Made by a program: the position numbers and the translations under genes. From IMG/VR virus record IMGVR_UViG_3300009703_004110, positions 1-64,000 of that record: a stretch of 64,000 bases of DNA. One strand, 5' to 3'. The notes below the pieces were generated by a model that searched no databases, was not told the DNA's origin, and saw only the letters and a program-made list of their open reading frames with translations. This document shows positions 1 to 48,376 of this stretch, one piece after another. Numbering within the stretch: the stretch's first letter is position 1; every line of letters starts with the position of its first letter.

Positions 1-19
1 CTTTTACCGACACCCGGGT

Positions 20-54
20 TGGCACAGAGATTGCACTATGCAAGAGTCATGCCA
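20..54. promoter_or_regulatory. Double sigma54 box palindrome, copy 1
   Basis: + strand TGGCAC-AGAGA-TTGCA, 3-nt spacer, - strand TGGCAT-GACTC-TTGCA. Confidence 0.75.
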
Positions 55-96
55 GGATTCCCGGAGCAAGCCAAAGACCGAGCTTTCGCCCAGTCT

Positions 97-414
97 CTAA
101 GCCGCCAGCCTCTCAAGAGCTTGCCAGCCTCTCAGCACCTCTACCTCGGTGAAGGTGTCATCTGCCCAGCGTCCCTCGTTACAGTCCGTCAGGAAGCCCT
201 CCCAGGACTGGAGGATACCACACTCGATCCCTTCCTCCATCTGGCAGACGATCGCCTCACAGTTGACGTCCAGATCGAACGCAGCGTGGATCCAATCGTG
301 TTGGGTCGAGACGTCGTAGCTCTCATCCGTCTCGTAACCTCGGGCTGCCGCCCAAGCCTCGGAGATCGCCACCCGCTCAGCGACGGGCGGCAGCTTGAAG
401 GTTACTTCCCGCAT
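97..414 (-). CDS. Hypothetical acidic protein
   Basis: 105-aa ORF, GC-biased codons, TGATG coupling with a small upstream ORF. Confidence 0.7.
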   Translation of the reverse strand: MREVTFKLPPVAERVAISEAWAAARGYETDESYDVSTQHDWIHAAFDLDVNCEAIVCQMEEGIECGILQSWEGFLTDCNEGRWADDTFTEVEVLRGWQALERLAA

Positions 415-549
415 CAGTAGGGCGCCCCAGCCTTCTCAGCCTTGAGGGCTGCCATGTTGGCGTCCATGCTGTGCAGCGCGAGCAGGGTCATTCGGGACTC
501 CGTGGTGTACCAGAGCTTTACTGTCCGAGTTTTCTTTTTGTCCGAATGA

Positions 550-834
550 TTAGGGTCGGTAGACCGGAGAAACCATGATATACCATTCCTGCGTTAGATC
601 GTTCCACACCAGATCGGTGACGTACGAGCCGTCAGCGGTGAGCATCTCAGCGCACCAGCGGTGCCCATTCTCCCAGAACTCCTCTGGAACGATGCAGACC
701 TCTCCGGGGTAGTAGAGCACTTCCGGCCGGATCGGGTCAGCCGCGTTGGACGCATGGCCCTTGGGGACCGTAGCACAAGCGGTAAGCTGCGCCAGGATTG
801 ACAGGAAGAGCAGGAGGGTAGTGATTGTACGCAT
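550..834 (-). CDS. Putative lipoprotein
   Basis: Signal peptide MRTITTLLLFLSILAQ with lipobox LTAC; GAGG RBS upstream. Confidence 0.75.
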   Translation of the reverse strand: MRTITTLLLFLSILAQLTACATVPKGHASNAADPIRPEVLYYPGEVCIVPEEFWENGHRWCAEMLTADGSYVTDLVWNDLTQEWYIMVSPVYRP

Positions 835-991
835 GTGTTCTTATTACCTCGTCCATTTTCTTTCTGCTCAATCGTCCAGACCACGCTCAGCGCGGGTCGG
901 AGGCCAGCCGAAACCGACGATCAGAATCAGAATGAAGATGGTAGTCATACGACAGACTTACTTTCTAATCTTTCTTTCTGCCCGTGCGTGT

Positions 992-1026
992 TGGTACGCC
1001 TCTTGCATAATGCATAAAGCGTGCCA
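992..1026. promoter_or_regulatory. Double sigma54 box palindrome, copy 2
   Basis: + TGGTAC-GCCTC-TTGCA, taa, - TGGCAC-GCTTT-ATGCA. Confidence 0.75.
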
Positions 1027-1086
1027 ACTTTCTGGGGCACGACTAAGGGGAGCCGAAAGGCTCCCCGTGGGCGCACGACCCCTCTC

Positions 1087-1548
1087 TCAGAGGGGCTCGA
1101 TTTCGTAGACCGCGACGGCTTCCCCGTACTCGATGATATCGCGGAGTAGGCGGCGGTACTCTCGGCGTCCGATATCGAGGACCATCTGCATTTTGCGGTC
1201 GGTGACCTCCAACCCAACAGTCTGGCCCATCGCCTGGCACCAGGAGATACTGGCCTTGTGCTGGGAGGTCGCGGTCAGCGCCTCATTGAGCACCAGGGCC
1301 TCTTCCGTCAGGATCGGGCGCGACGGAGCGTTGGGCGTCGGGTCGGTCTTGAAGAAGAACCGGCGCAGGACGGGGCTCCAGCCGAACCGCTCCGCGAACA
1401 GGAAGTGGTAACAGTCGTGGACCTCGAATCCGTCGCCGAAGATCGGCAAGTCATCTGCGAACTGGATCCAGCTCCTGTCGTGCTCGCGAGTCTCGATGAT
1501 GGTCCGGTTACCTCGGTGATACCAGCGGACCTCGATGATACGCGCCAT
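1087..1548 (-). CDS. Stand-alone MazG C-terminal-domain-like protein
   Basis: HDCYHFLFAERFGWSPVLR...RPILTEEAL resembles the HDxxH..GWSPV.R..EE pattern of MazG_C; start moved to the Met at 1548 (GGAG RBS). Confidence 0.6.
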   Translation of the reverse strand: MARIIEVRWYHRGNRTIIETREHDRSWIQFADDLPIFGDGFEVHDCYHFLFAERFGWSPVLRRFFFKTDPTPNAPSRPILTEEALVLNEALTATSQHKASISWCQAMGQTVGLEVTDRKMQMVLDIGRREYRRLLRDIIEYGEAVAVYEIEPL

Positions 1549-1636
1549 GCAGGAAGCTCCATAGGGTGGGTTACACCCTGCACTTACCGTCTCAGTTTTC
1601 TTTTTGCTCCAGCGATTGGTCGCCCTTATCTCACGC

Positions 1637-1671
1637 TGGCATAGCAGGTGCATTATGCAAGTAGCGTGCCA
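1637..1671. promoter_or_regulatory. Double sigma54 box palindrome, copy 3
   Basis: + TGGCAT-AGCAG-GTGCA, tta, - TGGCAC-GCTAC-TTGCA. Confidence 0.75.
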
Positions 1672-1677
1672 GGTTAT

Positions 1678-1812
1678 TCAACACAAACCAATGGCGGGCT
1701 GGCCTTTTACCTGGAACCTATCTTGCACTATGCAAGGACTGTGCCAGGTTTGAAAGGCCACAGCACACCCGGAGAGGAGAACGGAGGAGAGCAGCAGGGT
1801 CAGGACTCGCAC
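1678..1812 (-). pseudogene. Short lipoprotein-like ORF, possibly a truncated remnant
   Basis: GTG start, MRVLTLLLSSVLLSGC lipobox; the frame runs straight into palindrome copy 4 and ends after 44 aa. Confidence 0.4.
1712..1746. promoter_or_regulatory. Double sigma54 box palindrome, copy 4
   Basis: + TGGAAC-CTATC-TTGCA, cta, - TGGCAC-AGTCC-TTGCA. Confidence 0.7.
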
Positions 1813-1861
1813 GATGACTTTCCTATGTAGTATGATGATTGGGCACCCTTTCGTTACCCGT

Positions 1862-2371
1862 CTAGTTTTCTTTCTGAGCGTAGAGGTTGGACACCAGCAC
1901 AAGGATCAGGAAGCAACAGTGCTCCCACAACTCCATCCGCTCCCCGATCAGGATGTCCCCCATGCAGAACATGGCAAAGACCATCGCAGATGCCCTATGG
2001 GCCTTGTCCAGGGCCCCTCGGGTCGGCGGGTAGCCCCGGAAGGTGCGGAGAAGCAGGATCAGGAACCACAGGCCGATCAAACCCTCCATGGAAGCCGCTC
2101 CATAGAGCAGAGCAAGGGAGACGGAGCGCGGGGCCCCGATTCGGGCAAACATTGCCGCCATTTTGTTGTCCCGATTGACCCCATAACCCCCAGTGGTTTC
2201 CATCGGCTGAATCCGCCCGATCTCAGCCCCCTCGGCATCGTAGATCACACCAGACGACGCAAAATCGCCTTGGAGGGGCTGATAGGTCCCGTTAAAGACC
2301 TTGTCACCAGCATTCAGCAGCCAGAATCCCGCCCAAAAGGCGATCAGGAGGGTAATCCAGCTACGGTGCAT
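1862..2371 (-). CDS. Integral membrane protein (DoxX/DUF2165-like, ~4 TM)
   Basis: Four hydrophobic stretches; LLNAGDK and MEGLIG patterns. Confidence 0.6.
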   Translation of the reverse strand: MHRSWITLLIAFWAGFWLLNAGDKVFNGTYQPLQGDFASSGVIYDAEGAEIGRIQPMETTGGYGVNRDNKMAAMFARIGAPRSVSLALLYGAASMEGLIGLWFLILLLRTFRGYPPTRGALDKAHRASAMVFAMFCMGDILIGERMELWEHCCFLILVLVSNLYAQKEN

Positions 2372-2465
2372 TTTACGTCCAGAAAGAGGGTATTAAAGGC
2401 TCATTACGACCCTGTTTTTCTTTTTGAGCGAAATGAGGCTCTTATTTGGGGCTATTATCCGCCCT

Positions 2466-2500
2466 TGGCATAGGCCTTGCATACTGCATAAATCATACCA
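2466..2500. promoter_or_regulatory. Double sigma54 box palindrome, copy 5
   Basis: + TGGCAT-AGGCC-TTGCA, tac, - TGGTAT-GATTT-ATGCA. Confidence 0.75.
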
Positions 2501-2784
2501 ACTTTGGTCGATAATAGGGTCGAACTGAGGGGATGGGAGGCCCTTATCGTGGCTTATAACCCGGTTAGGGTCAGAAGGTGAACAACGTTTTGTAAATAAA
2601 AAAACAATAGTTGTTTTGTTTTGTTCGTTTTGTAACAGTGCAAGTTGTTTTTGTTTTTTACAAATAGTTACTTGACAGCTTGACCCGAGACGCGATTTAT
2701 ACGGCTTATACGGCTCTGGCGCGAGTTGGCGACTGGCGTGGAAGTTGCGCACCGCTGGAGGTATTTTATCTTTTCTGAAAACCC

Positions 2785-2871
2785 ATCCATTGGTTTAAAG
2801 CTTATTCATTAACTCCTCAATCTTATCCATTGGATCTAAAGCAGTTCCATACGAAAAAACTTATCCATTGG
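2785..2871 (+). repeat. Three direct repeats of ATCCATTGG in a non-coding region
   Basis: Copies at 2785, 2825 and 2863 (CTTATCCATTGG at 2822 and 2860); degenerate copies near 2801, 2884 and 2900. Confidence 0.75.
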
Positions 2872-3015
2872 TTCTTCAGGCACATCCATCAGAAAGCATA
2901 TCCCTTGGGTCCACATATGCAAAAGAATGAACATTATCTTTACATATCACAATAGACTTATGGACTTGATAAATGAAGAAAACAAAACCATGGTATACCC
3001 TATGGTTTTTATATT

Positions 3016-3312
3016 TCACTTCTTCTTTTTACCCCTCGCCTTTAGCAGGGACCATGACTCAATGAATTGCGCTTTCTCTCGTGGACTCAGACTGTTTAAC
3101 ACCTTATCGGTTTTAACTTGCATCAGATAAGCTTTAGACCCTTTAGTCACATACTCAGTCCACATCCTTACGGGGGACTCTTGATATACTACAAGGGCAA
3201 AATCTTTTACCTTATAAACCCTTACTTCTACATCCTGTGCTATTAGGAATTCTAGATCTAGTTCTGGTGCATGTTTTAGGAATGGAATTCTATTATACTT
3301 ATCAACTACCAT
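3016..3312 (-). CDS. Hypothetical protein
   Basis: 98-aa ORF in a run of minus-strand genes. Confidence 0.65.
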   Translation of the reverse strand: MVVDKYNRIPFLKHAPELDLEFLIAQDVEVRVYKVKDFALVVYQESPVRMWTEYVTKGSKAYLMQVKTDKVLNSLSPREKAQFIESWSLLKARGKKKK

Positions 3313-3335
3313 ATCAAATTCTCTCAGAAATAATA

Positions 3336-3653
3336 TTAGCCGGCTTCGTTCTTAATCAGCAGATCAAGATGGTAAAGCAGCGGCTCCTTTTGTTCATTTG
3401 GGAGGGACTCAAACACTTCCTCAAAAGAAACTTGGGTGTGAGGATCCGCTTGCTCCATATTCTTATCTTGAAATATGGCTTCGCGGCGGAACCATCTTGG
3501 GCCTTCGGAAGTGGAAAATAACCTATAATTTGGTGAGCCCTTTATGGTCATCAGCCCGGGGATTATGCCTTGATTCATTAAAACATTAACCAATGTGTCC
3601 AAATGTCCTGGATATGTCATATCAAACTCGGTTAATGCAAACGTTCTTGTCAT
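3336..3653 (-). CDS. Hypothetical protein with FEEV..LxYHLD motif
   Basis: C-terminal SFEEVFESLPNEQKEPLLYHLDLL shared with other ORFs in the window. Confidence 0.75.
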   Translation of the reverse strand: MTRTFALTEFDMTYPGHLDTLVNVLMNQGIIPGLMTIKGSPNYRLFSTSEGPRWFRREAIFQDKNMEQADPHTQVSFEEVFESLPNEQKEPLLYHLDLLIKNEAG

Positions 3654-3674
3654 GGTTGAATTGTACCTTGGAAG

Positions 3675-4070
3675 TTATCTTTGGTTCAAGAAAAAGATTA
3701 AATTAACTTGCTCCTCTTTGGTGCAACGCTCAAATAGCGTCTTCATCAAGAGTGGCTGATAGATCCTTCCATCGCGTTCCTTTAGCGCACCGGACGCTAT
3801 CTCTGCTTCCTCAAGAAGGCTTTTATTCCCCTCGGTATCAATAAACATAAGATATTGTCCTTGGGCCGCATGGTTTGCTTTCAGCTCTATGTAAGCTCCC
3901 TCCGGTTCCTTTAAAGCATGCCGTCTTCTCTTTGGCGCCATTAAACATTCCGGCCAGTCCATATAATTCGATAACCAAAGATCTTCCATTGCATTAAAGT
4001 CGTTTAAATTAACTTTGCTTAATAACTCCGCGCCCATCACCAAGTGCATGTGACTCCAGGCGTTCATCAT
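3675..4070 (-). CDS. Hypothetical protein
   Basis: Start moved to MMNAWS at 4070 (GGAG RBS, ATGA overlap with the upstream frame). Confidence 0.65.
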   Translation of the reverse strand: MMNAWSHMHLVMGAELLSKVNLNDFNAMEDLWLSNYMDWPECLMAPKRRRHALKEPEGAYIELKANHAAQGQYLMFIDTEGNKSLLEEAEIASGALKERDGRIYQPLLMKTLFERCTKEEQVNLIFFLNQR

Positions 4071-4420
4071 GGTGGAAGCTCCAACCCCTCTTGGCTTGAA
4101 ACGGTAATGGTTCCCACCGGATAATTTAGAGATTTTCCTCCTGGGATAGCCCGGATATTTCGTTTCAGCTTTGCCATCTTTTGCTCCCCGGCGTACATCC
4201 ATCTGATAGCCTTATAAATATAGTACCCTCGACTCCAAACCCGGTCATAAAAACCTTCGAAATTTCTTTCACGATGACAATTATGGTTGTTTAGCCGATA
4301 TCTAAATTCGGCGTCATAAATTTTAGTGCTTTGTCGTTGATAATCAAGTAGAATATAAAGATAAGTTGATGAGCCATCTAAGTGTCCTGTTTTATATATA
4401 AAACTATCAACTGCATTTAT
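4067..4420 (-). pseudogene. 118-codon open frame without a canonical start at its 5' end
   Basis: Stop-free frame (INAVDSFIYKTGHLDG...GLELPP*) whose TGA overlaps the next ATG; not in the ORF track. Confidence 0.45.
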
Positions 4421-4496
4421 TCATGATTATCAATAATTTATAAGATTTATTTATACGTGATACCTGATAAATTTAGATCGTAATTTATACGGTCGT

Positions 4497-4859
4497 TTGA
4501 CCCTTCGGATTTATATGACCAAGTCTTGTCCAATATCTATAGCTGAATTACCGGAACCTAACCAGGTTTTTGAGGCTATAGACGGCAATATTGTGGTAGT
4601 TTATCGACCTGATTTATTCTACATGATGTCCGCCAGAATGGAACTCGCTCCGGCCTTTAGCTTTCATGAGAAGCCGATTATTGAGGACCAAGAGTCTGAC
4701 AGGTATTTAATGCATGTTGCTACCGCTGATTTCGTAGAGGGTCGCTTCTATATCTTACTAACGGTTGGCTTTGGTCATATAGAGGTCGTATTAGATGCAA
4801 CTACTGTTAAGATGCATTTAGAAAAGGAGTTTGTAAGTAACTATGATATTCAAAAATAA
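4497..4859 (+). CDS. Hypothetical protein
   Basis: 120-aa ORF overlapping the next gene; start may be the Met at 4515. Confidence 0.6.
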   Translation: MTLRIYMTKSCPISIAELPEPNQVFEAIDGNIVVVYRPDLFYMMSARMELAPAFSFHEKPIIEDQESDRYLMHVATADFVEGRFYILLTVGFGHIEVVLDATTVKMHLEKEFVSNYDIQK

Positions 4860-5730
4860 AAAACTAACTCCCGAACATTTAATGGTTTATAATCAGATGC
4901 CTGAGCGAGCGCAGATGGCAATGAATAATATACGGCCCGGATGGTCGTATCGCGGACCTATACGTAACGGATTGATATCTATCAACTTCTATGAGTGGGA
5001 GCAGATCAAGCGTAATGAGTCTAGTGGCCGCTGGGCTTCCAAGCCCAAGTCTCATCTGTCAAAAGAACTTGACTTTATTGATGTTAGTGAAAAGAATAAG
5101 CTTGATAATTGGATGTATTGCATTGAATATAATAATGAAATTCATCATCATTTCAATACCGCAGATTCCACAAATACTTATCAGTCCGGAGATATGCAGT
5201 TACCAAGGCATGCTATGTTTATCAGTGATAATATCAAACGCTTACTAGAGTTATCCAATGAGAACCTTCTTGCCAGTAGCACTAAGATAATGGATGTTAA
5301 TCTGATTAGAAATGCCCCAGAAAAGTCTATAACTTTTATTACCGAAGATGATGAGGAGTTCGTTGGCACAGGTTCCACTTTAAATATAGCCGCCATTATG
5401 CTCTTTGGTAAGACCTTTAAATACAAGTATATGATGGAGCGTCCTTCTATATCTCAATTCAAATGTGACGATATTTCTTTTGATACTTTAATTAGAGGGC
5501 AGAATACTGTTGTTATGAAAGGCATAAAATCTTGGTATGCGCACATTAGAAATATGAATCTTGATAACTATACTGTTTTTATGTCAAGAAAGATATTTCA
5601 AGAAATACAGGATGAGATAGGGGATAACTTTAATTATCTTGGATGTTATAGCTTCGAAGAGGGCGAATATCATGCAGTAGAAGAGGATAATGGTCTCGGA
5701 ATAATCAACGGACTGTTCGATAGCTTTTAA
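4843..5730 (+). CDS. Hypothetical protein
   Basis: 295-aa ORF with AAGGAG upstream. Confidence 0.75.
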   Translation: MIFKNKKLTPEHLMVYNQMPERAQMAMNNIRPGWSYRGPIRNGLISINFYEWEQIKRNESSGRWASKPKSHLSKELDFIDVSEKNKLDNWMYCIEYNNEIHHHFNTADSTNTYQSGDMQLPRHAMFISDNIKRLLELSNENLLASSTKIMDVNLIRNAPEKSITFITEDDEEFVGTGSTLNIAAIMLFGKTFKYKYMMERPSISQFKCDDISFDTLIRGQNTVVMKGIKSWYAHIRNMNLDNYTVFMSRKIFQEIQDEIGDNFNYLGCYSFEEGEYHAVEEDNGLGIINGLFDSF

Positions 5731-5784
5731 TGATGATTATCATCATTAAAAAAGGCCCCGCAGGAGAAATCCCGTGAGGCCTTT
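5725..5784. terminator. Bidirectional terminator region between convergent genes
   Basis: Perfect 13-bp inverted repeat 5725-5751 followed by an AAAGGCC...GGCCTTT stem 5751-5784. Confidence 0.7.
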
Positions 5785-5801
5785 GTTCCAGCTTATTTGG
5801 C

Positions 5802-6749
5802 TTATACGTCGAAGTCGATTTCTCCACCAGTATAAGCTATCTCTCCCTGCCACTCAAATGGCCCAAGACTTAATGCGCTGTATTGACCGGCATATTGAGA
5901 GATGCCTGGATACTGAGACGGCCAGTCAATGCCGGCGACAATCTCTTCCAGAGACTCTTTGTGCTTGGCCGTTAGACCGGGGTTCTCTTGCTTCCCACCT
6001 GATGGCTCCGCAACTACTGAGCCAGGAACAGGCTTAGCATTGGTGTCCAACTTAAAGGCAAACTGATAGTTCTTAGCCTGACCTTCAGTTACTTCGTATG
6101 GTAAGCCGAAGCCTTCCGCATTATCATAAAACGGAGACTGCTCGCCAAGCGCTATATATCTCTTATAGAAGTCTTGCTGCTCTCTTGCTGGGTCAGCTGC
6201 TGCAACTACAGTTTTTTTTTCAGCCGATTTGAGAAGTTCATCTATAGTGAGCATGGCTTCAGCCACCGGAGAGCTTCCAGGCTCGCCAGAGAGTCCCTCT
6301 ACACCCCAAGCTGTATATGGCTTAGGCTCCTCTCCTCTCATTTCAGAATAGACGTCTCCACCCAAGTGTAACTGCTGAAGACTTTGTACAATCGGTTCTA
6401 ATTGAGCCAACTGAGCCTTTTCTTCTGGTCCGCCCCATCCCTCATCGATCATATCCTTAAGAGCCTGAACACCCGCCAAAAGATCTTTAACCTTTTCAGT
6501 CGCTTCTGCCTCTAGGTCTCCGCCGCTTTCGCCAGCTAACGGCTCTTCGCCCGGAAGCCCCTCTTCAAGAGGCTCCTCTCCGAATGCTTCTACGGCTGCT
6601 TCGTCCATGCTATCAAAAGGCGTCTGTGAGGCTGTATCGTCCCACTCATCTAGCGCCTTCTTAGCTAACCGATCTGCTATATCCGCTTCTTTGGTAAGTC
6701 CTGCGGCATCCAGATCGTTAGCCAACTTTAATAATTTAACGTGAATCAT
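5802..6749 (-). CDS. Acidic protein with the shared N-terminal leader; putative virion protein
   Basis: KLLKLANDLDAAGLTKEADIADRLAKKA leader; GGAG RBS. Confidence 0.75.
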   Translation of the reverse strand: MIHVKLLKLANDLDAAGLTKEADIADRLAKKALDEWDDTASQTPFDSMDEAAVEAFGEEPLEEGLPGEEPLAGESGGDLEAEATEKVKDLLAGVQALKDMIDEGWGGPEEKAQLAQLEPIVQSLQQLHLGGDVYSEMRGEEPKPYTAWGVEGLSGEPGSSPVAEAMLTIDELLKSAEKKTVVAAADPAREQQDFYKRYIALGEQSPFYDNAEGFGLPYEVTEGQAKNYQFAFKLDTNAKPVPGSVVAEPSGGKQENPGLTAKHKESLEEIVAGIDWPSQYPGISQYAGQYSALSLGPFEWQGEIAYTGGEIDFDV

Positions 6750-19854: not shown

Positions 19855-20492
19855 TTCATTATTGGGCCGGTAACAACCTCTGGTTCATCAGGGATCGGGG
19901 CGTCAGCTATTTCCGCTAGTAAGGCTATGATCCTATCTAATTGCACACCAACATCAGATGCATTATCTTTTGCGGTCTCAAGTATGACGTCTAAATCTTC
20001 AAGCTGATTGTCAACTCCTATTAACTGCCCCTCAATCTTTTCATTTGAAACAGAATAATTAGTAGGTGAGTAATCGATAAATAAGTTACCTCCTATTATT
20101 TCATCTGAACCACCAGCAATATGAGTAGAGGCATGTACTTTTGGCATTCTGGTTTTAGAAGTGTCATCTAATGTCGCATCAGAAATAATATCATTAAGTT
20201 CAGATAAAGTTGCTAGACCAAGATCTTTAAAATTAAGATTTTCTATTCTAAGCCTTAAACCCTCTAGTTCTTGGTCTAATTTATTTAACTCATCATTAAA
20301 GTCATCTAGCCTAGCCCTTACTGTAAAAAAACTACTCGAAGACGGAAGGACTCCTAGTTCTGCTTCTATATTTGCAATAGCTGAACGAAGAGTGTTAACA
20401 CTAAAAGCATTAATTTCAGTTGACCCATCTACTGCAATGGGCAACTGAGCGTAGCCATCGATCGCGTTAGGATATATACTGAAATCTGACAT
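19851..20492 (-). CDS. Tail-fibre-like protein with shared N-terminal anchor domain
   Basis: YPNAIDGYAQLP...LRSAIANIEAELG paralogous to 23233-24477; HASTHIAGGSDEI fibre motif. Confidence 0.65.
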   Translation of the reverse strand: MSDFSIYPNAIDGYAQLPIAVDGSTEINAFSVNTLRSAIANIEAELGVLPSSSSFFTVRARLDDFNDELNKLDQELEGLRLRIENLNFKDLGLATLSELNDIISDATLDDTSKTRMPKVHASTHIAGGSDEIIGGNLFIDYSPTNYSVSNEKIEGQLIGVDNQLEDLDVILETAKDNASDVGVQLDRIIALLAEIADAPIPDEPEVVTGPIMK

Positions 20493-26746: not shown

Positions 26747-29125
26747 TTACATCACTTTTGCAGCAAAAGTTGCTAACTTACTCCTTTCTCCCCTAACTAG
26801 GGTTATATGCCCAGAGCCTTCAAATTCTTTAAATTTGTCAACTACGACGCCCAAGCCAGATGTTTTTATGTTTAATTTATCAGAATCTATCTGGTCCAAA
26901 TCTCCAAGTAATACAATCTTTGAGTTATTGCCCATTCTTGTAATTAAAGCTTTGGCTTCTTTCATATTGATATTCTGAGATTCATCAATAATAAAATAAG
27001 TATTAGGAAGCGTTCGTCCCCTAATATAAGATAATGCTTCGATTTCAATCTGACCTTTCTCGAACATCAGATTGATATAACCACCGCCATGTTTTCCTAA
27101 TAGAACTTTAATATTGTCCATCACAGGCTGTAACCAAGGCAACATCTTTTCTTCTTTGGTTCCAGGCAAAAAGCCGATCTCCTTAGAAGTACTTTCTGCG
27201 GGACGAGATATGATTATCTTTTCATAAGTACCAGCTTGAAGCTCCTGCAAACCTGCAGCAATAGCAAGCAAAGTATTATGTGTTACAATATAATCATCTG
27301 TAATATACAGATGATCTTTGCTGTCGATCATGATGCATTGAGTCTCTTTCTTTGAAAGCTTATCGATTTTATCAATATATTTTCTAAGATTAACAGAACT
27401 CGTTGGACGCCACCTATTAGCCTTTCTTGATAATAAAAATGGACAAAATTCTTTAGAAAGTGAAATGGTTACTCTAAAAGACTCTTTACCTATTTTGGTT
27501 CTTCCTTTGTATTTATAAGTAGTAAATCTACTATTTACAGTTGCTTTGCCACCTAACGAACGAACAATTTCTGCCAAGTCATTTGCAAGCTTGGCAGATG
27601 TACTAGTAAATGTTGATTTTAAACCAGATTTGGTCACTGTGCCGTCTGTATCCATCAAGCCTCTGATTATAGACAATCTATCTCCTACGGATGATAGCTT
27701 ATAATCCTTTGGAATAAACTTATCTTCAGAACCTAAGCCCTGTAATTTAAGCTCAGATAAAAACTCTTTTAGTGGATTTGCAAAATTATTTCTTTTGTTT
27801 CCATCTTTAGTAATCCTATAATCATATTTCGAACCATTTATTTTTGAAATCTTACACCCAATTGACGGTAAGTAATCTGCAAAAAAATCTAAAATTTCAT
27901 TATCTGCCGATGATAAACATGGTGAACCAGATTTTATATATCCGTCTCCAAGTAAACATCCTAATATATATGGATCAATTTTTAACTCTTTAAAATCAAA
28001 CTCTATAGGAGATACAATTGGAATTGAGTGATTTCTTTTTCCATTTTTATTTCTCAAGGATTTTGAAATCTCTTCTAAAGATTTAACTTCACCTTTTCTA
28101 TTATAATCACGATCTCTCTGAGTTCTTGTTAGCCATAAATGTTCTATACATGACTCTGCAGATGTACCATCAGAAAATGTTATCTTATAGACATCCTTTT
28201 TTCCCTGCGGAAATACCCCAATAACATTAGCCATAGATCCGTCCGGTGTTAATACTTTACTTCCAAGCTTAATATCGCCCATTTTAACCCAACCATCTGG
28301 TGTTAAAATTCTCGAATAAAGAGGCTGCGCTTTTCCGCACCCCGCCATGCCAGTTAAGGTCACCATTGAAATACCGGGATCTAATAGCAATTCTAAAGCA
28401 AGAGTTTGCTCTTTATTTCTCGGTCTAATACCCTGAACTTTAAACTTTTTAGTAGAGCCGGCATAATGTAGCTTTCTCCAAATGCCATCTGTCCAGACCC
28501 TTGCTAGAGCGCTTTGCTGCCCTGACTTTAAAATTAAGAATTCATTTGAATAGTAGACGTCATCTAGATCAAATTCTTTCGGATCTATTTCTCCTTCTGC
28601 ATAAAAAGTATCTATAATTGACTCTTCAACCGCTAAGGTATGGACTCCGGTGAACTCACCTTCTTCTCTTTGCGCGATTAAATCTGATATACAGCAACAA
28701 TCAATCTTAAGCGCATCACACTTAACTCGTAAAGCAATATCCTCACTGACCAAGGTTACATTATCAAATACAGCCTTTGACTGCTTGGCTACTGCAATAA
28801 TTCTATTATCGACTATATCCTTCATATTTGGCGGAAGGACTGATAAATCTGATGTTGATATAACAAAGATTCTTGAATTATTTTGGGTAATGACACCCTT
28901 AAAAATACTTCCAGTCTTTCTTAGCGCATCAAGCCTTCTATTTACCTGCCTCGCTGAGGCGCCAGTGACATCTCTATATGTTTTAAGTTTGTCAAGCTCC
29001 TCCAAGACTTCTAGTGGAATATAGATGTCGTGGTCTTGTATGACATCTGTTAGTTCTGGAAACGCTATAAGTGATGAGGTATCAACTACTAAAATAGCCC
29101 TTCCTAATGCTGAGCTTTTACTCAT
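26747..29125 (-). CDS. phoH: PIN-PhoH (PhoH2/YlaK-type) protein, intein-containing
   Basis: PIN VVDTS/VLEELD/DNRI; Walker A GMAGCGK|T; IGFLPG, IRGRT, IIDESQN, TRMG. Confidence 0.93.
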   Translation of the reverse strand: MSKSSALGRAILVVDTSSLIAFPELTDVIQDHDIYIPLEVLEELDKLKTYRDVTGASARQVNRRLDALRKTGSIFKGVITQNNSRIFVISTSDLSVLPPNMKDIVDNRIIAVAKQSKAVFDNVTLVSEDIALRVKCDALKIDCCCISDLIAQREEGEFTGVHTLAVEESIIDTFYAEGEIDPKEFDLDDVYYSNEFLILKSGQQSALARVWTDGIWRKLHYAGSTKKFKVQGIRPRNKEQTLALELLLDPGISMVTLTGMAGCGKAQPLYSRILTPDGWVKMGDIKLGSKVLTPDGSMANVIGVFPQGKKDVYKITFSDGTSAESCIEHLWLTRTQRDRDYNRKGEVKSLEEISKSLRNKNGKRNHSIPIVSPIEFDFKELKIDPYILGCLLGDGYIKSGSPCLSSADNEILDFFADYLPSIGCKISKINGSKYDYRITKDGNKRNNFANPLKEFLSELKLQGLGSEDKFIPKDYKLSSVGDRLSIIRGLMDTDGTVTKSGLKSTFTSTSAKLANDLAEIVRSLGGKATVNSRFTTYKYKGRTKIGKESFRVTISLSKEFCPFLLSRKANRWRPTSSVNLRKYIDKIDKLSKKETQCIMIDSKDHLYITDDYIVTHNTLLAIAAGLQELQAGTYEKIIISRPAESTSKEIGFLPGTKEEKMLPWLQPVMDNIKVLLGKHGGGYINLMFEKGQIEIEALSYIRGRTLPNTYFIIDESQNINMKEAKALITRMGNNSKIVLLGDLDQIDSDKLNIKTSGLGVVVDKFKEFEGSGHITLVRGERSKLATFAAKVM
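27275..28330 (-). mobile_element. Class 3 intein (Ala1) with LAGLIDADG endonuclease, in PhoH Walker A
   Basis: AQPLYS...HLW...GLMDTDG...TQCI...VTHN|T; 352 aa. Confidence 0.9.
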
Positions 29126-29510: not shown

Positions 29511-32500
29511 TTAAAACTCTATAGTGCATGTGGCCCCATCACAAAACTTGTCCTCTTTCTCGTGGACGCTAAAGCTTAAATCAATATCTTTTAGATTGCT
29601 AGATAGTTTCAAGTATTCTTCTCTAGAAATAGTCTCGTAAGGTGCCAATTTATATCCGTGGTCATTCAATGGTAGGAAACTTATGGACTTTAGTCTGGTC
29701 TCATACATAGAAAGTGCTGTAGAAATTTGCTTAGCCTCAGTCTCGTTGAATGTAATTGTGGCAGAAACTTGATTATCAGCCCAGTATCTTTGCATCTGAG
29801 CTACTAACTCTAATTGCTCCCACATACTAGCATCATACTTAGACTTAACAAAATTCTCTATGTAAATAGGAAAGTCAACGACCATAGAGTCTGGTTGATA
29901 AGGGCATGGGTTTACCTGATGTCCTGCCTCAATACATGCCGGAATAATAGGAGAGTCTTTCTGAATTCTAATTCTTCTAATATAGTATTCGCTATGATCA
30001 AAATGAACACCAGGAGAAACACCTGGCAAGAGAGAGACTGTACCACTCGGCTTAACAGATGTCATTTTAATAGAGCGAGGTACGCAAAGCCAGTCGCTAT
30101 ATTTCTTGTCCAATCCTCTAATTCTATCGTATCCACTATCACACCATTCCATATGAGCACGGTACCCAACTTTTGCAATATTATTTTGGATACCAGACTG
30201 AGAGCAACCAATTCTTCTATTACGCATCATTACCGCATTAGTACGTGGGTCGTGCGTTGGAAGTAGTGTGACCGTTTTGGCATATAAATATGCGTACTTA
30301 AGGGTCGCCAGATAATCCTCAAGGCTTTCGTGATTAACAGGGAAGGTCTCGACTAGACAGCATAACTCAAAGCTCTCTAGCGTTTGCTCAGAACAGTTGT
30401 GAACAATAATTCCATTTGCCCCAAATCTATGTACTTCATCAATAGTACAATCATATACCTTTTCAATACCAATATAAGTAACCGACTCTACTTCTGCAAC
30501 AAATCTTTCTCTATTTAGAGTTCGTCTATAATCATTCATTCTAAGTCGTAATTTATCATTTCTTTCCATTTCATCAAAATTAATCTGTAATAAAAAGTGT
30601 GATAAATTATCATTACTAATTACTAATTCATGCATAGCATTACATTCATATAGTTTATATCCACTTTTTCCATCTGGTAGCAACCGCTTTCCAGCTTCGC
30701 GCCTATTTCTATAAACTGTTGAATTAACTCCAAAATTAAGTAACATTTTTTGAATAATTAATAAATGCTGCTCGTTTGCTAATCCTATTCTAACCGAAAG
30801 TCCCTTGGTTTGAGTGCCCTGAACTGAGCCATCTGCATCAAAAAAGCCACGTAAAAACCCTGCTTGAAATTTAGATGATGTACATAATAAGGTGCTTTCA
30901 TTTATTATATTTTTTTCATGATCAATTCCATAATCTATTGCTTTTTCCCAAAGTTGCCGACTTTTAATTGAGACCATATCTTTTGAATCTATATTACACC
31001 CATTTCTATTAGAGTGATACCTAGGATCTCCCCCCAAGGTCTTTGTTCTTTCTATAGCAAGATTAAGCATATCATTTTTTGTAGATCCCCAATATTGCAA
31101 AATTCCTGATTTTTGCTCTTTATGAAAATATCCATCTCCTAGCAAGCCACCCAATAACCATCCTTCATTAAATGAGCCATCGCCTTCCCAGCTAATAAGA
31201 TTATTTTCATTATATCTTGTGTCATTTAATATCAACTTATCACCAGCATCTAAATCACCAGCTTCTACCCATAATTCATATCGCTTTTTTCTTGTAATTT
31301 TTGGAGCAGTTAATATCTTGTGATCTTCGGTTACTTTAATAGAATGTCCTTCTTTTGTTTTAACCAAATATACTGGCTTTGTTCCTGTTTCAAAAACACC
31401 GGTTTTACAGTTATATTTTTTTCCATTGACTATAGCTATAAATGGTTTATCAAGCATTTCATCTGCTCTAACAGGTCCTTCTTCTGTAAAAATTAAGGTA
31501 TCTCCGGTAATACATGGGTTGGCACCCTCTGCTCTCCTATCTTTCCAGTTAGGTGGCTCCATCATACGACCGTAAGCTCTAGCGTTATGAAGCCACATAA
31601 ATCCAGGCTCGCCATTTACTTTGATCATATCAGCAAACTTAGAATAATCTATCCCAATTTCTGCAAAAATAGAATTATTAGAGGCCCAACGACGATCTTC
31701 TAAGGCTTCTTTGTTAAGTTTTAAAGATCTAAACTCTTTATCTTCGGGAGATCCGAACATAATTTCGGCAATTCTGCGCACATTACCTGCAACAACACAT
31801 TTGCCGACATAATTAAAGATGTCCACAATTTGTGTTGAATTAATCTCATAAGGTGTGAACTCTTGTATCTCAATAGAAAAAGATAAAGGCTCTGGGCGTT
31901 CTGTTTCTGACATAACTGTAGTAGGTGTAATTTTAGTATCGTTTGGTACCAAAACAGAGATTATATTCTCATGCAAATTTCTTAATGGGCCGGCACCAGA
32001 CGCAGTTCCACCGAATCCTCTAATTGGGGCTCCGTATGGTCTAATTTTAGAATAATTAAAAACTGGAATAGAGCCTCTTCCGACAAAGGCATCCAATAGA
32101 ACTCTAACAGATTCTACCCAGCCTTCTCTTGTGTCAGGGATTACCCATTCCGCCTGTGCCATTTTCGGTGTTTTAATAGTAACAAGGCCGGCACCTTTTA
32201 CATCTCCACCGACACCAACTCCAAGCATTGACATATCCATAAGAAACGTAAATGGTGAGGCAAAGTCTGATGAAATATCCTTAGTACTTGTGAAAGCGCA
32301 ATTATTTAAAGCAGCACTTCCCATTTTCCATATTTGAGGAACCCCCATCATCCAAAGTCCGCGTCCTGGTGGAAGAAATTTAAACTCCCACATTCTAGTA
32401 AACATTTCTTGAGCACTTCTTTGTGATTTATGAGCATTCCAAGGCAGCCTTAGTCTTTCACAGTGTGACCTCTGAATATTATAAACACCTTCAACAACTC

Positions 32501-32675
32501 TTTGGCAAGTTTGCCAAAATTCTTCGGTTCTCCCGGACTCTTCATCAATTACTCTAGCGTAAGTTCGCTTATAAGTAACATATCCGAGCGGGCCCCACTT
32601 CGGTTGCTGGTCTATAAAGTTCGACATGAACTTGGTAGACAGCTTAAACGGGTTCGCTGGAAAAGACAGCATCAT
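29511..32675 (-). CDS. nrdJ: Class II (AdoCbl-dependent, monomeric RTPR-type) ribonucleotide reductase, intein-containing
   Basis: PPGRGLW, ALNNC, GNVRR, GANP|C.E, VKPSGT, C-terminal CDGATC. Confidence 0.93.
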   Translation of the reverse strand: MMLSFPANPFKLSTKFMSNFIDQQPKWGPLGYVTYKRTYARVIDEESGRTEEFWQTCQRVVEGVYNIQRSHCERLRLPWNAHKSQRSAQEMFTRMWEFKFLPPGRGLWMMGVPQIWKMGSAALNNCAFTSTKDISSDFASPFTFLMDMSMLGVGVGGDVKGAGLVTIKTPKMAQAEWVIPDTREGWVESVRVLLDAFVGRGSIPVFNYSKIRPYGAPIRGFGGTASGAGPLRNLHENIISVLVPNDTKITPTTVMSETERPEPLSFSIEIQEFTPYEINSTQIVDIFNYVGKCVVAGNVRRIAEIMFGSPEDKEFRSLKLNKEALEDRRWASNNSIFAEIGIDYSKFADMIKVNGEPGFMWLHNARAYGRMMEPPNWKDRRAEGANPCITGDTLIFTEEGPVRADEMLDKPFIAIVNGKKYNCKTGVFETGTKPVYLVKTKEGHSIKVTEDHKILTAPKITRKKRYELWVEAGDLDAGDKLILNDTRYNENNLISWEGDGSFNEGWLLGGLLGDGYFHKEQKSGILQYWGSTKNDMLNLAIERTKTLGGDPRYHSNRNGCNIDSKDMVSIKSRQLWEKAIDYGIDHEKNIINESTLLCTSSKFQAGFLRGFFDADGSVQGTQTKGLSVRIGLANEQHLLIIQKMLLNFGVNSTVYRNRREAGKRLLPDGKSGYKLYECNAMHELVISNDNLSHFLLQINFDEMERNDKLRLRMNDYRRTLNRERFVAEVESVTYIGIEKVYDCTIDEVHRFGANGIIVHNCSEQTLESFELCCLVETFPVNHESLEDYLATLKYAYLYAKTVTLLPTHDPRTNAVMMRNRRIGCSQSGIQNNIAKVGYRAHMEWCDSGYDRIRGLDKKYSDWLCVPRSIKMTSVKPSGTVSLLPGVSPGVHFDHSEYYIRRIRIQKDSPIIPACIEAGHQVNPCPYQPDSMVVDFPIYIENFVKSKYDASMWEQLELVAQMQRYWADNQVSATITFNETEAKQISTALSMYETRLKSISFLPLNDHGYKLAPYETISREEYLKLSSNLKDIDLSFSVHEKEDKFCDGATCTIEF
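30396..31514 (-). mobile_element. Intein with LAGLIDADG endonuclease, directly before the RNR catalytic Cys
   Basis: NP|CITGDT...GFFDADG...IIVHN|CSEQ; 373 aa. Confidence 0.93.
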
Positions 32676-33198
32676 TAGCCTCCATATAATCTTTTACTTT
32701 TTGTATTGATCTCTTTTTTAGAATACGCACACGCTCGACAGACACGTTCAGCTCTTGGCTTATTGAGGTTAGAGTGTGCTCTTCGAGTAAAGACATGTAT
32801 AATATTTTTTGTTCTCTATTCGAAAGCATTTTGCAACTTAAAACCTCTTTTACCAGCACAACATTTTCCTGCCATTTTACATTCAAACCGCTAAGATTAA
32901 TAGACTTCAGTGGTCTGTATTTTTTCTGAAAGTCTCTACTTGCATTAGCAAAATGCCAGTTGGACCATCGGTAAAAGTCAAAATGTCTATGGCAGTCAAA
33001 AGTTTTAATGGAGGTCCAGAGGGCCAAGTTAAATTCCTGCTCCAAATCCTCCACATGAGAAAAACTTCTAAATTTTTTTATTCTACTAATAACAAGTGGA
33101 CGCAGTTTCAAAAACAGATCTGCCTGCCATTTACTAGAAGTACCGTTAGCGTTGTCTGAGAATATGCTATGAACCTCATGATTACTCAAGAGAGACAT
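32644..33198 (-). CDS. Sigma70-family sigma factor (regions 2 and 4)
   Basis: EDLEQE..LALW.SIKTFD (region 2); LSNREQKIL...TLTSISQELNVSVERVR (region 4); start at MSLLSN. Confidence 0.85.
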   Translation of the reverse strand: MSLLSNHEVHSIFSDNANGTSSKWQADLFLKLRPLVISRIKKFRSFSHVEDLEQEFNLALWTSIKTFDCHRHFDFYRWSNWHFANASRDFQKKYRPLKSINLSGLNVKWQENVVLVKEVLSCKMLSNREQKILYMSLLEEHTLTSISQELNVSVERVRILKKRSIQKVKDYMEANDAVFSSEPV

Positions 33199-33199
33199 T

Positions 33200-33751
33200 T
33201 TATTCCTTATCTTCGCCTTGTCTGTATTGCTCAGTGAACGCGCCATCCTTCCACATTCGGACAGTTAGTGTTTCTTCTGACAATGTAAATGTCGCAACCA
33301 CATCATCCCGTACAGAGAATGAGGCCGCAGATATATGTCTCGTGCCGCTTCCTTCCGGTATTTCTAAGGATGGCTCTTCAACGGTTAGATATATTCCAGT
33401 GCCAAGAATTTGGCCATTATGATTAATTACAATGGCACCGTCATCTCCGCTTTCAAAAATCTTATCCACCTCTTGATCAAATTGTCCAAAAGCAACATTC
33501 ATATACTTTTGAATTAGATTCTTGCCAAGCTGGCGCATACCAGGTACGGCGTGATCATGATATCTATCAAAGGCTCCTAGGACCACTAAAACCCCGATGC
33601 GCTTTCCTTTCTTTTGCAAATTATCAGCTAGAGAGCACATCAAGGAATATATTTTCTTTTCCGATCGCTCTCTTGCCATGTTAAATTGATATGAGTAATC
33701 TACGTGTGGTTCTTTACGAACTGTTACATTTGTTTCAGCAGATTCAGCCAT
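33200..33751 (-). CDS. Stand-alone diadenylate cyclase (DAC/DisA_N) domain protein
   Basis: DGA motif (DDGAIVI), GTRHISAA, LSEET. Confidence 0.85.
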   Translation of the reverse strand: MAESAETNVTVRKEPHVDYSYQFNMARERSEKKIYSLMCSLADNLQKKGKRIGVLVVLGAFDRYHDHAVPGMRQLGKNLIQKYMNVAFGQFDQEVDKIFESGDDGAIVINHNGQILGTGIYLTVEEPSLEIPEGSGTRHISAASFSVRDDVVATFTLSEETLTVRMWKDGAFTEQYRQGEDKE

Positions 33752-48316: not shown

Positions 48317-48376
48317 GCGTTCTCCATACCTAGATTTTACTCTAGGCACGAAGAAATGCTTGAATTTATATGTAAA

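What the first reader, a model, noticed from the sequence alone, without database searches (positions are those of the whole stretch)
2372..3015. Sharp GC boundary with a T-rich tract and iteron-like repeats: possible origin or genome-end junction
Seen: ~640 bp without a convincing gene, at the switch from GC-rich to AT-rich DNA. It contains a strand-biased T-rich tract (~2587-2670, TTGTTTTGTTTTG...) and ATCCATTGG repeats at 2785, 2825 and 2863 (40 and 38 bp apart), two of which begin TTATCCA like a DnaA box (TTATCCACA). Inference: a replication origin, a packaging or terminus site, or the join of the genome ends. The GC-rich, sigma54-marked side may be the first-injected region adapted to a high-GC host. 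A chimeric assembly is the alternative explanation.
Basis: partly seen in the sequence, partly recalled or inferred. Interest (0 to 1): 0.6.

Follow-up and report, generated by a model that had tools for sequence, protein, structure and literature searches.

The report
Huge phage's GC step and control region
The flagged 640 bases are a real gene-free control region inside a ~420-kb phage genome, at the head of a GC-rich block of tiny genes, and the same sharp GC step followed by a slow decline recurs in five other huge phage records (four independent lineages), so it is a built-in and apparently undescribed feature of these phages, not an assembly error or a prophage edge.

Summary
Window 2372-3015 is the longest tRNA-free gene-free gap of the record. 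It has four direct repeats (core ATCCATTGG), a T-rich tract, and a GC change from 0.58 to 0.39.

It is neither a chimera nor a prophage-host junction. Three assemblies cross it, and a second sample holds both sides. A 420.5-kb contig carries the GC-rich DNA with phage DNA on both sides.

There is only one sharp edge. Downstream, GC falls slowly from 0.60 to 0.44 over about 28 kb. Five other ~350-480-kb phage records (four independent lineages), all distant relatives, show the same sawtooth.

The GC-rich block holds about 60 tiny co-oriented genes. It carries 20 dyads, each made of two facing sigma-54-type -24/-12 motifs (22 arms against 0.06 in shuffles). It also carries 29 strictly sense-strand promoter-like elements. 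The first copy of each lies inside the flagged stretch.

Best reading: this is the control region at the functional start of the genome. It ends the AT-rich gene array and opens a host-polymerase-read early block.

Whether the four repeats act in packaging, replication or activation is not resolved. The DnaA-box reading is weak. I found no report of the sawtooth or the virus-enriched dyads in the held library.

The parts
3016..3312 (-). Last gene (98 aa, no known relatives) of the long AT-rich, co-oriented gene array that runs towards the boundary.
   Evidence: ORF list and codon-position GC; no Pfam or PHROG hit.
2984..3009 (-). Hairpin of 10 pairs followed by a T run on both strands. It is an intrinsic-terminator-like element just after the stop codon of the 98-aa gene.
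   Evidence: Terminator scan; it is the only stable local stem in the fold of the minus strand.
2778..2910 (.). Four direct repeats of about 18 nt at 2778-2795, 2818-2835, 2856-2873 and 2893-2910, spaced 40/38/37 nt. On the gene-sense strand they read AACCAATGGATAAGTTTT, with a CCAWTGG palindromic core. They are candidate protein-binding sites whose role is unresolved.
   Evidence: The spacing is not a multiple of 3, so this is not a protein repeat. An 889-nt contig of the source run carries a 33-nt near-copy of one unit.
2690..2770 (.). Short GC-rich spacer (55% GC) with tandem TTATACGGC x2 at 2697-2714.
2584..2669 (.). A/T tract (77% A+T; T-rich on the + strand, A-rich on the gene-sense strand) with period-5 TTGTT and an imperfect 21-nt inverted repeat.
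   Evidence: As RNA it has no significant fold. A weak CrcZ-like Rfam hit is far below threshold.
2466..2500 (.). First of 20 dyads of 35 bp. Each is two facing sigma-54-type -24/-12 motifs: TGGCAYR-N4-TTGCA, 3 nt, then the inverse. Here the antisense arm is exact and the sense arm is degenerate (TGGTA...ATGCA).
2403..2425 (-). First of 29 sense-strand promoter-like elements (ARAAAGAAA-N8-13-GTAAK), 32 nt before the start codon of the first GC-rich gene.
   Evidence: 0 copies in 200 shuffles of the block.
1862..2371 (-). First gene of the GC-rich block: a 169-aa membrane protein with a weak DoxX-like match and GC3 of 0.75.
1..1861 (-). Continuation of the GC-rich block inside the window. Genes: 1087-1653, 550-834 (lipoprotein-like) and 97-414. 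Further dyads: 1712-1746, 1637-1671, 992-1026 and 20-54. Further promoter-like elements: 1583-1605, 957-979, 843-865 and 517-539. The block continues for about 28 kb beyond window position 1 in the ENA contig.

Best explanation
The stretch is the non-coding control region at the functional start of a ~420-kb huge phage genome with a circular map.

Shown:
- About 95% of coding bases lie on one strand.
- The AT-rich gene array ends here with a terminator hairpin.
- Directly after it begins a ~25-30-kb GC-rich block of about 60 tiny genes, all transcribed away from the boundary.
- Nearly every gene in the block has its own copy of a conserved regulatory module: a 35-bp dyad of sigma-54-type motifs plus a sense-strand AAAAAGAAA-N10-GGTAAT element. 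The first copy of each lies at 2500-2403.
- The GC step is intrinsic to the phage. It is the sharp edge of a sawtooth whose other side is a slow decline. The same sawtooth occurs in five other distantly related huge phage records (four independent lineages).

Inferred:
- The block is the first-expressed (early, host-takeover and anti-defence) region.
- It is read by the host RNA polymerase before the phage's own sigma factors and tRNAs act.
- The boundary marks the fixed point from which a polar process starts, either DNA entry or packaging.
- The four ATCCATTGG repeats and the A/T tract are binding and bending sites for a protein that acts at that start point. That protein could be an activator of the first promoters or a packaging or replication factor.
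For: - Continuity: a Logan contig of 11,506 nt spans 1-6000. The JGI contig of 391,083 nt starts 2 nt before the window. The ENA contig of 420,521 nt runs through the boundary and through the whole block back into AT-rich phage DNA.
- A second sample from another study holds 100%-identical pieces of both sides at similar low depth.
- There is one sharp edge only. GC3 rises from 0.37-0.42 to 0.72-0.74 and decays to 0.44 over about 28 kb. GC1, GC2 and intergenic GC shift too.
- The same sawtooth, with a cluster of sigma-54-type arms starting at the step, is seen in G001 (circularly closed, 452 kb), G002, G003, G004 and G005. These share a protein at 35-38% identity with this phage.
- In every case the block is transcribed away from a 330-650-nt non-coding region.
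- Motif statistics: 22 arms against 0.06 in shuffles; 29 sense-only promoter-like elements against 0.
- Gene content fits an early region. There are tiny ORFans plus an ArdC-like anti-restriction protein, an L7/L12 C-terminal-domain protein, an RF-1-domain (ArfB-like) protein, and rhomboid, pilin-like and OmpA-like proteins.
- The phage has two sigma-70-family genes but no RNA polymerase beta subunit. More than 25 tRNA genes lie 90-165 kb downstream of the boundary.
- No integrase was found, and no tRNA lies at the boundary.
Against: - No expression data exist, so 'early' is inferred only from gene content, promoter arrays and analogy.
- Sigma-54 promoters need an activator ATPase. No enhancer-binding protein or rpoN was found in this phage or in five others.
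- The dyads show no strand preference, and in small phages they form tight tandem arrays. That would also fit a plain protein-binding site.
- A purely transcriptional module does not predict a smooth GC decline over 30-85 kb, nor the rise of intergenic GC.
- The four repeats are not found at the steps of the relatives, so their role cannot be argued from conservation.
Confidence: 0.55

Rival explanations
1. Packaging start (pac) site with limited circular permutation. Headful series start at the boundary, so genome ends and terminal redundancy fall in the tens of kb downstream with falling frequency. End-driven recombination and GC-biased repair would then leave a GC sawtooth. The four repeats and the A/T tract would be the terminase small-subunit recognition and bending site. 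This can coexist with the best explanation.
For: - The profile has a sharp edge and a one-sided decay over about 7-20% of the genome.
- All codon positions and intergenic DNA are shifted, as expected of a DNA-level bias and not of codon selection alone.
- Repeats next to a bent A/T tract resemble known pac/cos recognition sites (own knowledge of lambda cosB, SPP1 pac and P1 pac).
- The assemblies close as circles, as expected for permuted genomes.
Against: - No terminase gene was found near the site. One terminase family search was negative and the neighbouring genes are ORFans.
- No read-level termini or coverage data could be obtained.
- GC-biased conversion in phages is itself hypothetical, and I found no paper on it in the library.
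- It does not explain why the promoter and dyad modules start exactly here.
Confidence: 0.2
2. Replication origin. The four repeats are iterons for an initiator, the A/T tract is the unwinding element, and replication runs one way, co-directional with nearly all genes.
For: - Four regularly spaced direct repeats lie about 110 nt from a 77% A+T tract.
- It is the longest non-coding gap.
- All genes are co-oriented away from and towards this point.
Against: - GC skew is monotonic over the whole map and follows transcription, so it gives no origin signal.
- The skew is near zero in the block.
- No initiator-like gene is adjacent.
- The DnaA-box match is only 7 of 9, and only in two of four copies.
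- The repeat spacing of 37-40 nt is not a whole number of helical turns.
- No comparable repeat cluster lies at the steps of the relatives.
Confidence: 0.12
3. Gene-acquisition hot spot. New GC-rich cassettes enter at the boundary and older ones drift away while decaying towards the phage's AT-rich composition, which would give a sharp edge and an age gradient.
For: - The units are cassette-like: one small ORF with its own conserved module.
- Almost no gene homology exists between the blocks of related phages.
- Short repeated intergenic segments lie within the block.
Against: - The genes are ORFans with phage-type regulatory modules, not recognisable host genes.
- Decay from 0.62 to 0.40 GC while gene order and modules stay intact seems unlikely.
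- No recombinase is adjacent.
Confidence: 0.08
4. Prophage-host junction (att site), as the IMG/VR 'provirus' label suggests, with the GC-rich DNA being host chromosome.
For: - IMG/VR labels the record 'provirus'.
- There is a large GC difference.
Against: - The provirus cut is at the other end of the record, and it removed 58.8 kb of AT-rich phage DNA.
- The GC-rich DNA lies between phage DNA on both sides in one contig whose coordinates close into a circle of about 420.1 kb.
- There is no integrase, no tRNA and no second sharp edge.
- Block genes are tiny ORFans with phage-wide regulatory motifs.
- A circularly closed relative has the same structure.
Confidence: 0.02
5. Chimeric assembly of a GC-rich genome and an AT-rich phage.
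For: - The composition change is abrupt.
- Two assemblies break 2.4 kb inside the GC-rich side, at the same base.
Against: - Three assemblers cross the boundary itself.
- The far side is a gradient, not a junction.
- The other break is a (GCT)n repeat inside a gene.
- A second sample carries both sides.
- Independent assemblies of five other phage records from other samples show the same pattern.
Confidence: 0.02

Closest known systems
Early or 'host-takeover' regions at the leading end of large lytic phages: T5 first-step-transfer region, SPO1 host-takeover module, T7 class I genes with tandem host-polymerase promoters (own knowledge, not tested here)
   Same: A compact block of many very small, mostly unknown genes, each with a strong conserved promoter. 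It starts at a fixed genome point, is transcribed away from it, contains anti-restriction functions, and is followed by genes read with phage-encoded sigma factors. In T5 the edge of this region is a repeat-rich non-coding stretch.
   Different: There is no evidence here for physical ends or long terminal repeats. The block has a GC content 20 points above the rest of the genome and a slow GC decline. The motifs resemble sigma-54, not sigma-70. None of the genes is homologous to T5, SPO1 or T7 early genes.
Sigma-54 (RpoN) dependent -24/-12 promoters of bacteria
   Same: Each arm fits TGGCAC-N5-TTGCA with the canonical GG-to-GC spacing and the preferred flanking bases.
   Different: The arms come as facing pairs 3 nt apart, with no strand preference. 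No enhancer-binding protein or upstream activator site was identified. The paired form is rare in bacterial genomes (12 hits in 596 Gb) but frequent in viral contigs (at least 60 hits).
Iteron-type replication origins (lambda ori, plasmid oriV) and pac/cos recognition sites (lambda cosB, SPP1 pac, P1 pac)
   Same: Three to four short direct repeats lie next to an A/T-rich, possibly bent tract in a non-coding region.
   Different: There is no adjacent initiator or small-terminase gene, no skew switch, and no read-end data. The spacing of 37-40 nt is unlike the 19-24 nt of classical iterons.
Genomic-island or prophage boundaries seen as GC steps
   Same: An abrupt change of base composition.
   Different: Only one sharp edge, with the other side a gradient. 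There is no integrase, tRNA or flanking direct repeat. The whole structure lies inside a circular phage map and recurs in related phages.

Membership tests
Iteron-type replication origin | Cluster of three or more direct repeats (iterons) | tested here: met
   Four copies spaced 40/38/37 nt; the cluster is beyond chance.
Iteron-type replication origin | Adjacent A/T-rich unwinding element | tested here: inconclusive
   A 77% A+T tract lies 110 nt from the repeats. Unwinding was not tested.
Iteron-type replication origin | Initiator gene next to or around the iterons | tested here: not met
   The neighbouring genes have no family hits and no relatives. There is only a weak atlas lead.
Iteron-type replication origin | DnaA boxes (TTATCCACA, at most one mismatch) | tested here: not met
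   The best copies match 7 of 9 positions (TTATCCATT) and occur in only two of four repeats.
Iteron-type replication origin | Strand-composition (skew) switch at the site | tested here: not met
   Cumulative skew is monotonic over the record and follows gene orientation.
pac/cos packaging site or physical genome end | Read-start pile-up, coverage step or doubled coverage of a terminal repeat | not testable with these tools
   Only contigs of the runs could be laid, not raw reads.
pac/cos packaging site or physical genome end | Terminase genes adjacent | tested here: not met
   No terminase hit among the neighbours. The Terminase_6C search of the record was negative.
Prophage attachment junction | Integrase, tRNA or flanking direct repeats, and bacterial genes on the outer side | tested here: not met
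   No integrase and no tRNA. No repeat links the two assembly breaks. The outer side consists of phage-like tiny ORFs inside a circular map.
Sigma-54 dependent promoter | GG and GC elements spaced as in TGGCAC-N5-TTGC | tested here: met
   22 exact arms in the block, with a consensus of TGGCACG-N3-CTTGCATA.
Sigma-54 dependent promoter | Enhancer-binding AAA+ activator and its upstream sites | tested here: not met
   Only a Walker-A-level match was found. None in five other phages. A host activator cannot be excluded.
Sigma-54 dependent promoter | Transcription start about 12 nt after the GC element | not testable with these tools
   No RNA data were available.
Phage early / host-takeover region | Dense array of small genes, each with a conserved promoter, transcribed from a fixed start | tested here: met
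   About 60 called genes, mostly under 150 aa. There are 29 sense-only promoter-like elements, the first at 2403-2425.
Phage early / host-takeover region | Expressed first after infection | not testable with these tools
   No cultured host and no transcriptome.

The most novel reading that the evidence does not exclude
A clade of ~350-480-kb phages has a previously undescribed polar genome layout. From one fixed non-coding point the genome starts host-like (GC up to 0.60-0.70) and relaxes over 30-85 kb to the phage's own AT-rich composition. This first stretch is read through virus-specific facing pairs of sigma-54-type promoters. The sawtooth would be the footprint of position-dependent entry or expression timing, or of end-associated GC-biased recombination. 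The flagged region would be the site where that polar process begins.
Probability: 0.3. Interest if true: 0.85.

Novelty: new variant of a known kind. Interest (0 to 1): 0.7.

Why it matters
- It corrects a database label. The IMG/VR 'provirus' call cut 58.8 kb of true phage DNA from this record. Three of the five comparison records with the same sawtooth (G002, G003, G004) carry the same label; I did not check their cuts.
- It shows that a 20-point GC step inside a phage contig need not mean a chimera or a host flank.
- It gives a landmark for orienting huge-phage genomes that otherwise have no recognisable start.
- It raises two testable questions. Can phages drive early genes through the host's sigma-54 polymerase without a known activator, using paired promoters that bacteria themselves hardly use? 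And what polar process writes a GC gradient into a viral genome?

Tried and rejected
- No similarity of 1-6000 to any GenBank phage.
- No tRNA or Rfam family at the site. RNA folds of both strands were not significant, with z of -0.8 and -1.3.
- No terminal repeat between the record's ends.
- Relatives of the flanking proteins were sought in IMG/VR and in JGI metagenomes. None was found beyond the own contig.
- The 957-aa neighbour has two homologs at 39-44% identity, on short contigs. The one I fetched stops before the equivalent site; the other contig is too short to reach it.
- The GC-side 188-aa protein has only two short-contig relatives.
- The 175-aa neighbour is an ORFan. Its atlas look-alikes (DNA ligase N-terminal domain, score 0.92, poor model) are too weak to use.
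- A two-copy ATCCATTGG pattern scan of IMG/VR gave 108 hits, against about 30 expected by my own rough estimate. It was uninformative.
- A search for the same repeats or T tracts at the steps of the relatives found only a T-rich tract in G001.
- Searches for rpoN, an enhancer-binding protein, an RNA polymerase beta subunit, an integrase and the terminase C-domain were negative or generic.
- Literature searches on sigma-54 promoters in phages, on GC gradients in huge phages and on GC-biased conversion in phages found nothing relevant. The phage G paper describes no such gradient.
- The ENA record could not be opened as a whole. Circular closure therefore rests on coordinate arithmetic (about 376-391 nt overlap), not on reading both ends.

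Full report
**What is at the coordinates**

Window 2372-3015 lies between two real genes on the minus strand. One is a 98-aa gene (3016-3312) with the AT-rich composition of the right side. The other is a 169-aa membrane protein (1862-2371) with GC3 of 0.75. ORFs inside or across the stretch show no coding signature and hit no family. GC is 0.58 for 1-2371 and about 0.39 for the remaining 330 kb of the record.

The repeats are real. There are four 18-nt units at 2778, 2818, 2856 and 2893, spaced 40/38/37. Three carry the exact core ATCCATTGG. A cluster of this kind occurs twice in 332 kb; 20 shuffles of the whole record gave 0-2 anywhere. The T-rich tract is also real: 2609-2660 is 60% T, inside a 77% A+T stretch with an imperfect inverted repeat. 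In a crude ORF map this is the longest tRNA-free gap of the record, against a median gap of 34 nt.

**Where the window lies**

The window is the first 64 kb of a 332,270-nt IMG/VR record labelled 'provirus'. PHROG and Pfam hits mark it as a huge lytic-type phage:
- intein-bearing PhoH, ribonucleotide reductase and helicase (the inteins are my reading of the extra PHROG hits inside these proteins);
- a PhuZ-like tubulin, DNA polymerase III alpha, EF-G and RNA ligases;
- more than 25 tRNA genes.

Looking up its proteins by identity gave three assemblies of the same population.

- JGI contig Ga0114933_10000002 has 391,083 nt and starts 2 nt before window position 1. The left end of the record is therefore a true contig end. 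The 'provirus' cut is at the right end, at a gene boundary. It removed 58.8 kb of AT-rich phage DNA that carries host-like metabolic genes.
- Logan contigs tile the region. One of 11,506 nt spans 1-6000.
- ENA contig k141_1786444 has 420,521 nt. It runs through the boundary, through all the GC-rich DNA, and back into AT-rich phage DNA.

The two coordinate mappings between this record and the ENA contig differ by about 420.1 kb. The contig's ends should therefore overlap by about 376-391 nt, which makes it a closed circular map. This is arithmetic; I did not read both ends.

A second sample from another study holds 100%-identical short contigs from both sides of the boundary at similar low depth.

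The other assembly breaks have ordinary causes. One is a (GCT)n run inside a gene. Another is a perfect 32-nt palindrome. No long repeat connects the breaks.

Chimera and prophage junction are therefore rejected. There is also no integrase and no tRNA at the site.

**One sharp edge and a gradient**

Reading in the direction of transcription (window minus strand), GC jumps at the boundary from 0.39 to 0.58-0.62. It then falls slowly: 0.54 after 15 kb, 0.48 after 25 kb and 0.44 after about 28 kb. GC3 goes from 0.37-0.42 to 0.72-0.74 and back to 0.44. GC1, GC2 and intergenic GC move the same way, by less. Genes in the block are small, with means of 86-165 aa per 4-kb bin against 250-340 aa elsewhere. 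Almost all are on the same strand as the rest of the genome, and 95% of ORF bases lie on one strand.

**Regulatory modules of the block**

The motif TGGCA-N6-TTGCA is the sigma-54 -24/-12 consensus with canonical spacing. It occurs 22 times in the block and once in the other 330 kb. Two hundred dinucleotide shuffles of the block give 0.06.

Aligned, the sites are 35-bp dyads: two such arms face each other, 3 nt apart. The variable parts of the two arms are not complementary, so this is a protein site and not a hairpin. The dyads show no strand preference. There are 20 in all.

Downstream of most dyads, and strictly on the sense strand, lies ARAAAGAAA-N8-13-GTAAK, about 20-35 nt before the ribosome site. 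There are 29 copies in the block, none antisense, and 7 elsewhere. Some units also carry CGGCGGCAAAAG followed by a TTGACA-like hexamer.

The first dyad (2466-2500) and the first sense-strand element (2403-2425) lie inside the flagged stretch. Its left quarter is thus the promoter region of the first block gene.

The remaining part, read in the sense direction, holds in order:
- a terminator-like hairpin (3009-2984) after the last AT-rich gene;
- the four repeats;
- a short GC-rich spacer with TTATACGGC x2;
- the A/T tract.

**Gene content and transcription machinery**

Recognisable block genes are an ArdC-like anti-restriction protein with a zincin domain, an L7/L12 C-terminal-domain protein, an RF-1-domain (ArfB-like) protein, a rhomboid, a pilin-like protein and an OmpA-like protein. 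The rest are ORFans. The phage has two sigma-70-family genes. It has no RNA polymerase beta subunit, no rpoN and no clear enhancer-binding protein.

**Other phages**

The exact dyad pattern has at least 60 hits in IMG/VR but only 12 in 596 Gb of bacterial and archaeal genomes. The paired form is therefore a viral feature.

In five other huge phage records the arms cluster in one 5-35-kb region. These records share a protein at 35-38% identity with this phage. Each cluster starts at a sharp GC step that is followed by a slow decline.

| Record | Size | Background GC | Step | Decline |
|---|---|---|---|---|
| G001 | 452 kb, closed by a 254-nt overlap | 0.33 | to 0.57-0.65 at ~412 kb | over more than 60 kb, across the record end |
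| G002 | 481 kb | 0.40 | to 0.61 | to ~0.45 over ~60 kb, across the record end |
| G003 | 447 kb | 0.33 | to 0.70 | over more than 85 kb |
| G004 | 349 kb | as G001 | mirror image of G001 | as G001 |
| G005 | 448 kb | 0.28 | to 0.42 | to ~0.30 over ~30 kb, across the record end |

At every step there is a 330-650-nt non-coding region, and the block is transcribed away from it. The AT-side genes are co-directional in this phage and G001 and divergent in G002 and G003. Block genes are almost entirely non-homologous between phages. The four ATCCATTGG repeats are not found at the other steps.

Small complete phages carry tight tandem arrays of the dyad in a single control region without any GC step. 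None of these phages encodes a recognisable rpoN or activator.

**Interpretation**

Shown:
- The boundary is intrinsic to the phage and is conserved as an architecture.
- It is where the AT-rich gene array ends and a specially regulated block begins.

Inferred:
- The block is the first-used region, comparable to the T5 first-step-transfer region, the SPO1 host-takeover module or the T7 class I genes (own knowledge).
- It is read by host polymerase, possibly its sigma-54 form.
- The boundary is the fixed point of a polar process.

The smooth GC decline, and the fact that it affects non-coding DNA, are not predicted by a purely transcriptional module. They suggest either position-dependent timing of entry and expression, or end-associated recombination with GC-biased repair downstream of a packaging start. 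An origin of replication is less likely. There is no skew signal and no initiator gene, the DnaA-box match is weak, and the repeat spacing is odd. An acquisition hot spot with compositional ageing remains possible but less likely.

I found no description of such a sawtooth or of paired sigma-54-type sites in phages in the held library.

**Limits**
- No raw reads, RNA data or cultured host were available.
- The relatives are too distant, or in the second sample identical, so the repeats could not be tested by sequence conservation.
- Circular closure of the ENA contig is inferred from coordinates.
- No genetic code other than table 11 was used.

Noticed in passing
window 20-54, 992-1026, 1637-1671, 1712-1746, 2466-2500; ENA loci L002/L005/L010/L013 (composite positions 9154-34180): Twenty 35-bp dyads, each made of two facing sigma-54-type -24/-12 motifs, all confined to the GC-rich block. 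The exact pattern is common in viral contigs (at least 60 hits) and rare in bacterial genomes (12 hits in 596 Gb). In small phages it forms tandem arrays, for example four in a row in G007 at 20,238-20,416.
   Followed up: partly
window 517-539, 843-865, 957-979, 1583-1605, 2403-2425 (minus strand), and 24 more in L002-L013: A strictly sense-strand element, ARAAAGAAA-N8-13-GTAAK, sits before nearly every small gene of the block (29 copies). Seven more lie elsewhere in the genome, several of them in the tRNA region. It is a candidate phage-specific promoter or leader element.
   Followed up: partly
G001 ~411.8 kb, G002 ~420 kb, G003 ~126 kb, G004 ~39.5 kb, G005 ~433 kb (loci L081-L115): The same GC sawtooth (a sharp step, then a decline over 30-85 kb) occurs in five other huge phage records. 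The peak GC reaches 0.70 against a background of 0.33.
   Followed up: yes
G000 right end (332,270) and L004/L007/L011: The IMG/VR 'provirus' trimming removed 58.8 kb of AT-rich phage DNA that carries flotillin, NfeD, CoaE, NifU, AhpC, a Dfp-like protein and other host-like genes. G002, G003 and G004 carry the same label; I did not examine their cuts.
   Followed up: partly
window position 1 (= JGI contig position 3; the Logan contig starts at the same base): Two independent assemblies end at exactly the same base, 2.4 kb inside the GC-rich block, inside a promoter module and next to a dyad. The ENA assembly reads through. This could be a strain-variant breakpoint or a real DNA end. It is unexplained.
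   Followed up: no
window 2818-2850: An 889-nt, low-depth contig of the source run carries a 33-nt near-copy (3 mismatches) of one repeat unit, flanked by unrelated sequence. It hints at a related phage in the sample with the same motif.
   Followed up: no
G000 258,605-331,451 and ENA composite 32,241-33,087: At least 27 tRNA genes, among them one with anticodon CUA (an amber suppressor type) at G000 303,576-303,651. No recoding was assumed or tested.
   Followed up: no
window 26747-29125, 29511-32675, 45851-48349: The PhoH-like protein, the ribonucleotide reductase and the helicase carry extra PHROG hits inside them to large terminases, primase and helicase, and in PhoH to an endonuclease family. 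I read these as shared inteins; inteins were not tested directly.
   Followed up: no
window 60,353-60,375: Two perfect DnaA-box sequences (TTATCCACA) in tandem, 12 nt apart, inside the ORF at 59,515-60,423. This is a better DnaA-box match than anything in the flagged region.
   Followed up: no
window 32,644-33,246 and G000 ~205,780: Two sigma-70-family genes, with no RNA polymerase beta subunit gene found. There is also a weak PhuZ-like tubulin match at window 49,003-50,424.
   Followed up: partly
ENA composite 34,597-34,662 (L013 ~6,045-6,110) and 34,123-34,240: Four tandem 18-19-nt repeats (TTTTTCTGAGA core), and three copies of CGGCGGCAA followed 2-4 nt later by TTGACA, lie in the lower-GC part of the block. 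This is a second repeat-rich non-coding spot.
   Followed up: no
L082 9,000-11,800 (G001 409-411.8 kb): Extreme negative GC skew (-0.4 to -0.8) over about 3 kb of plus-strand ORFs just before the GC step of G001. It drops to about zero after the step.
   Followed up: no
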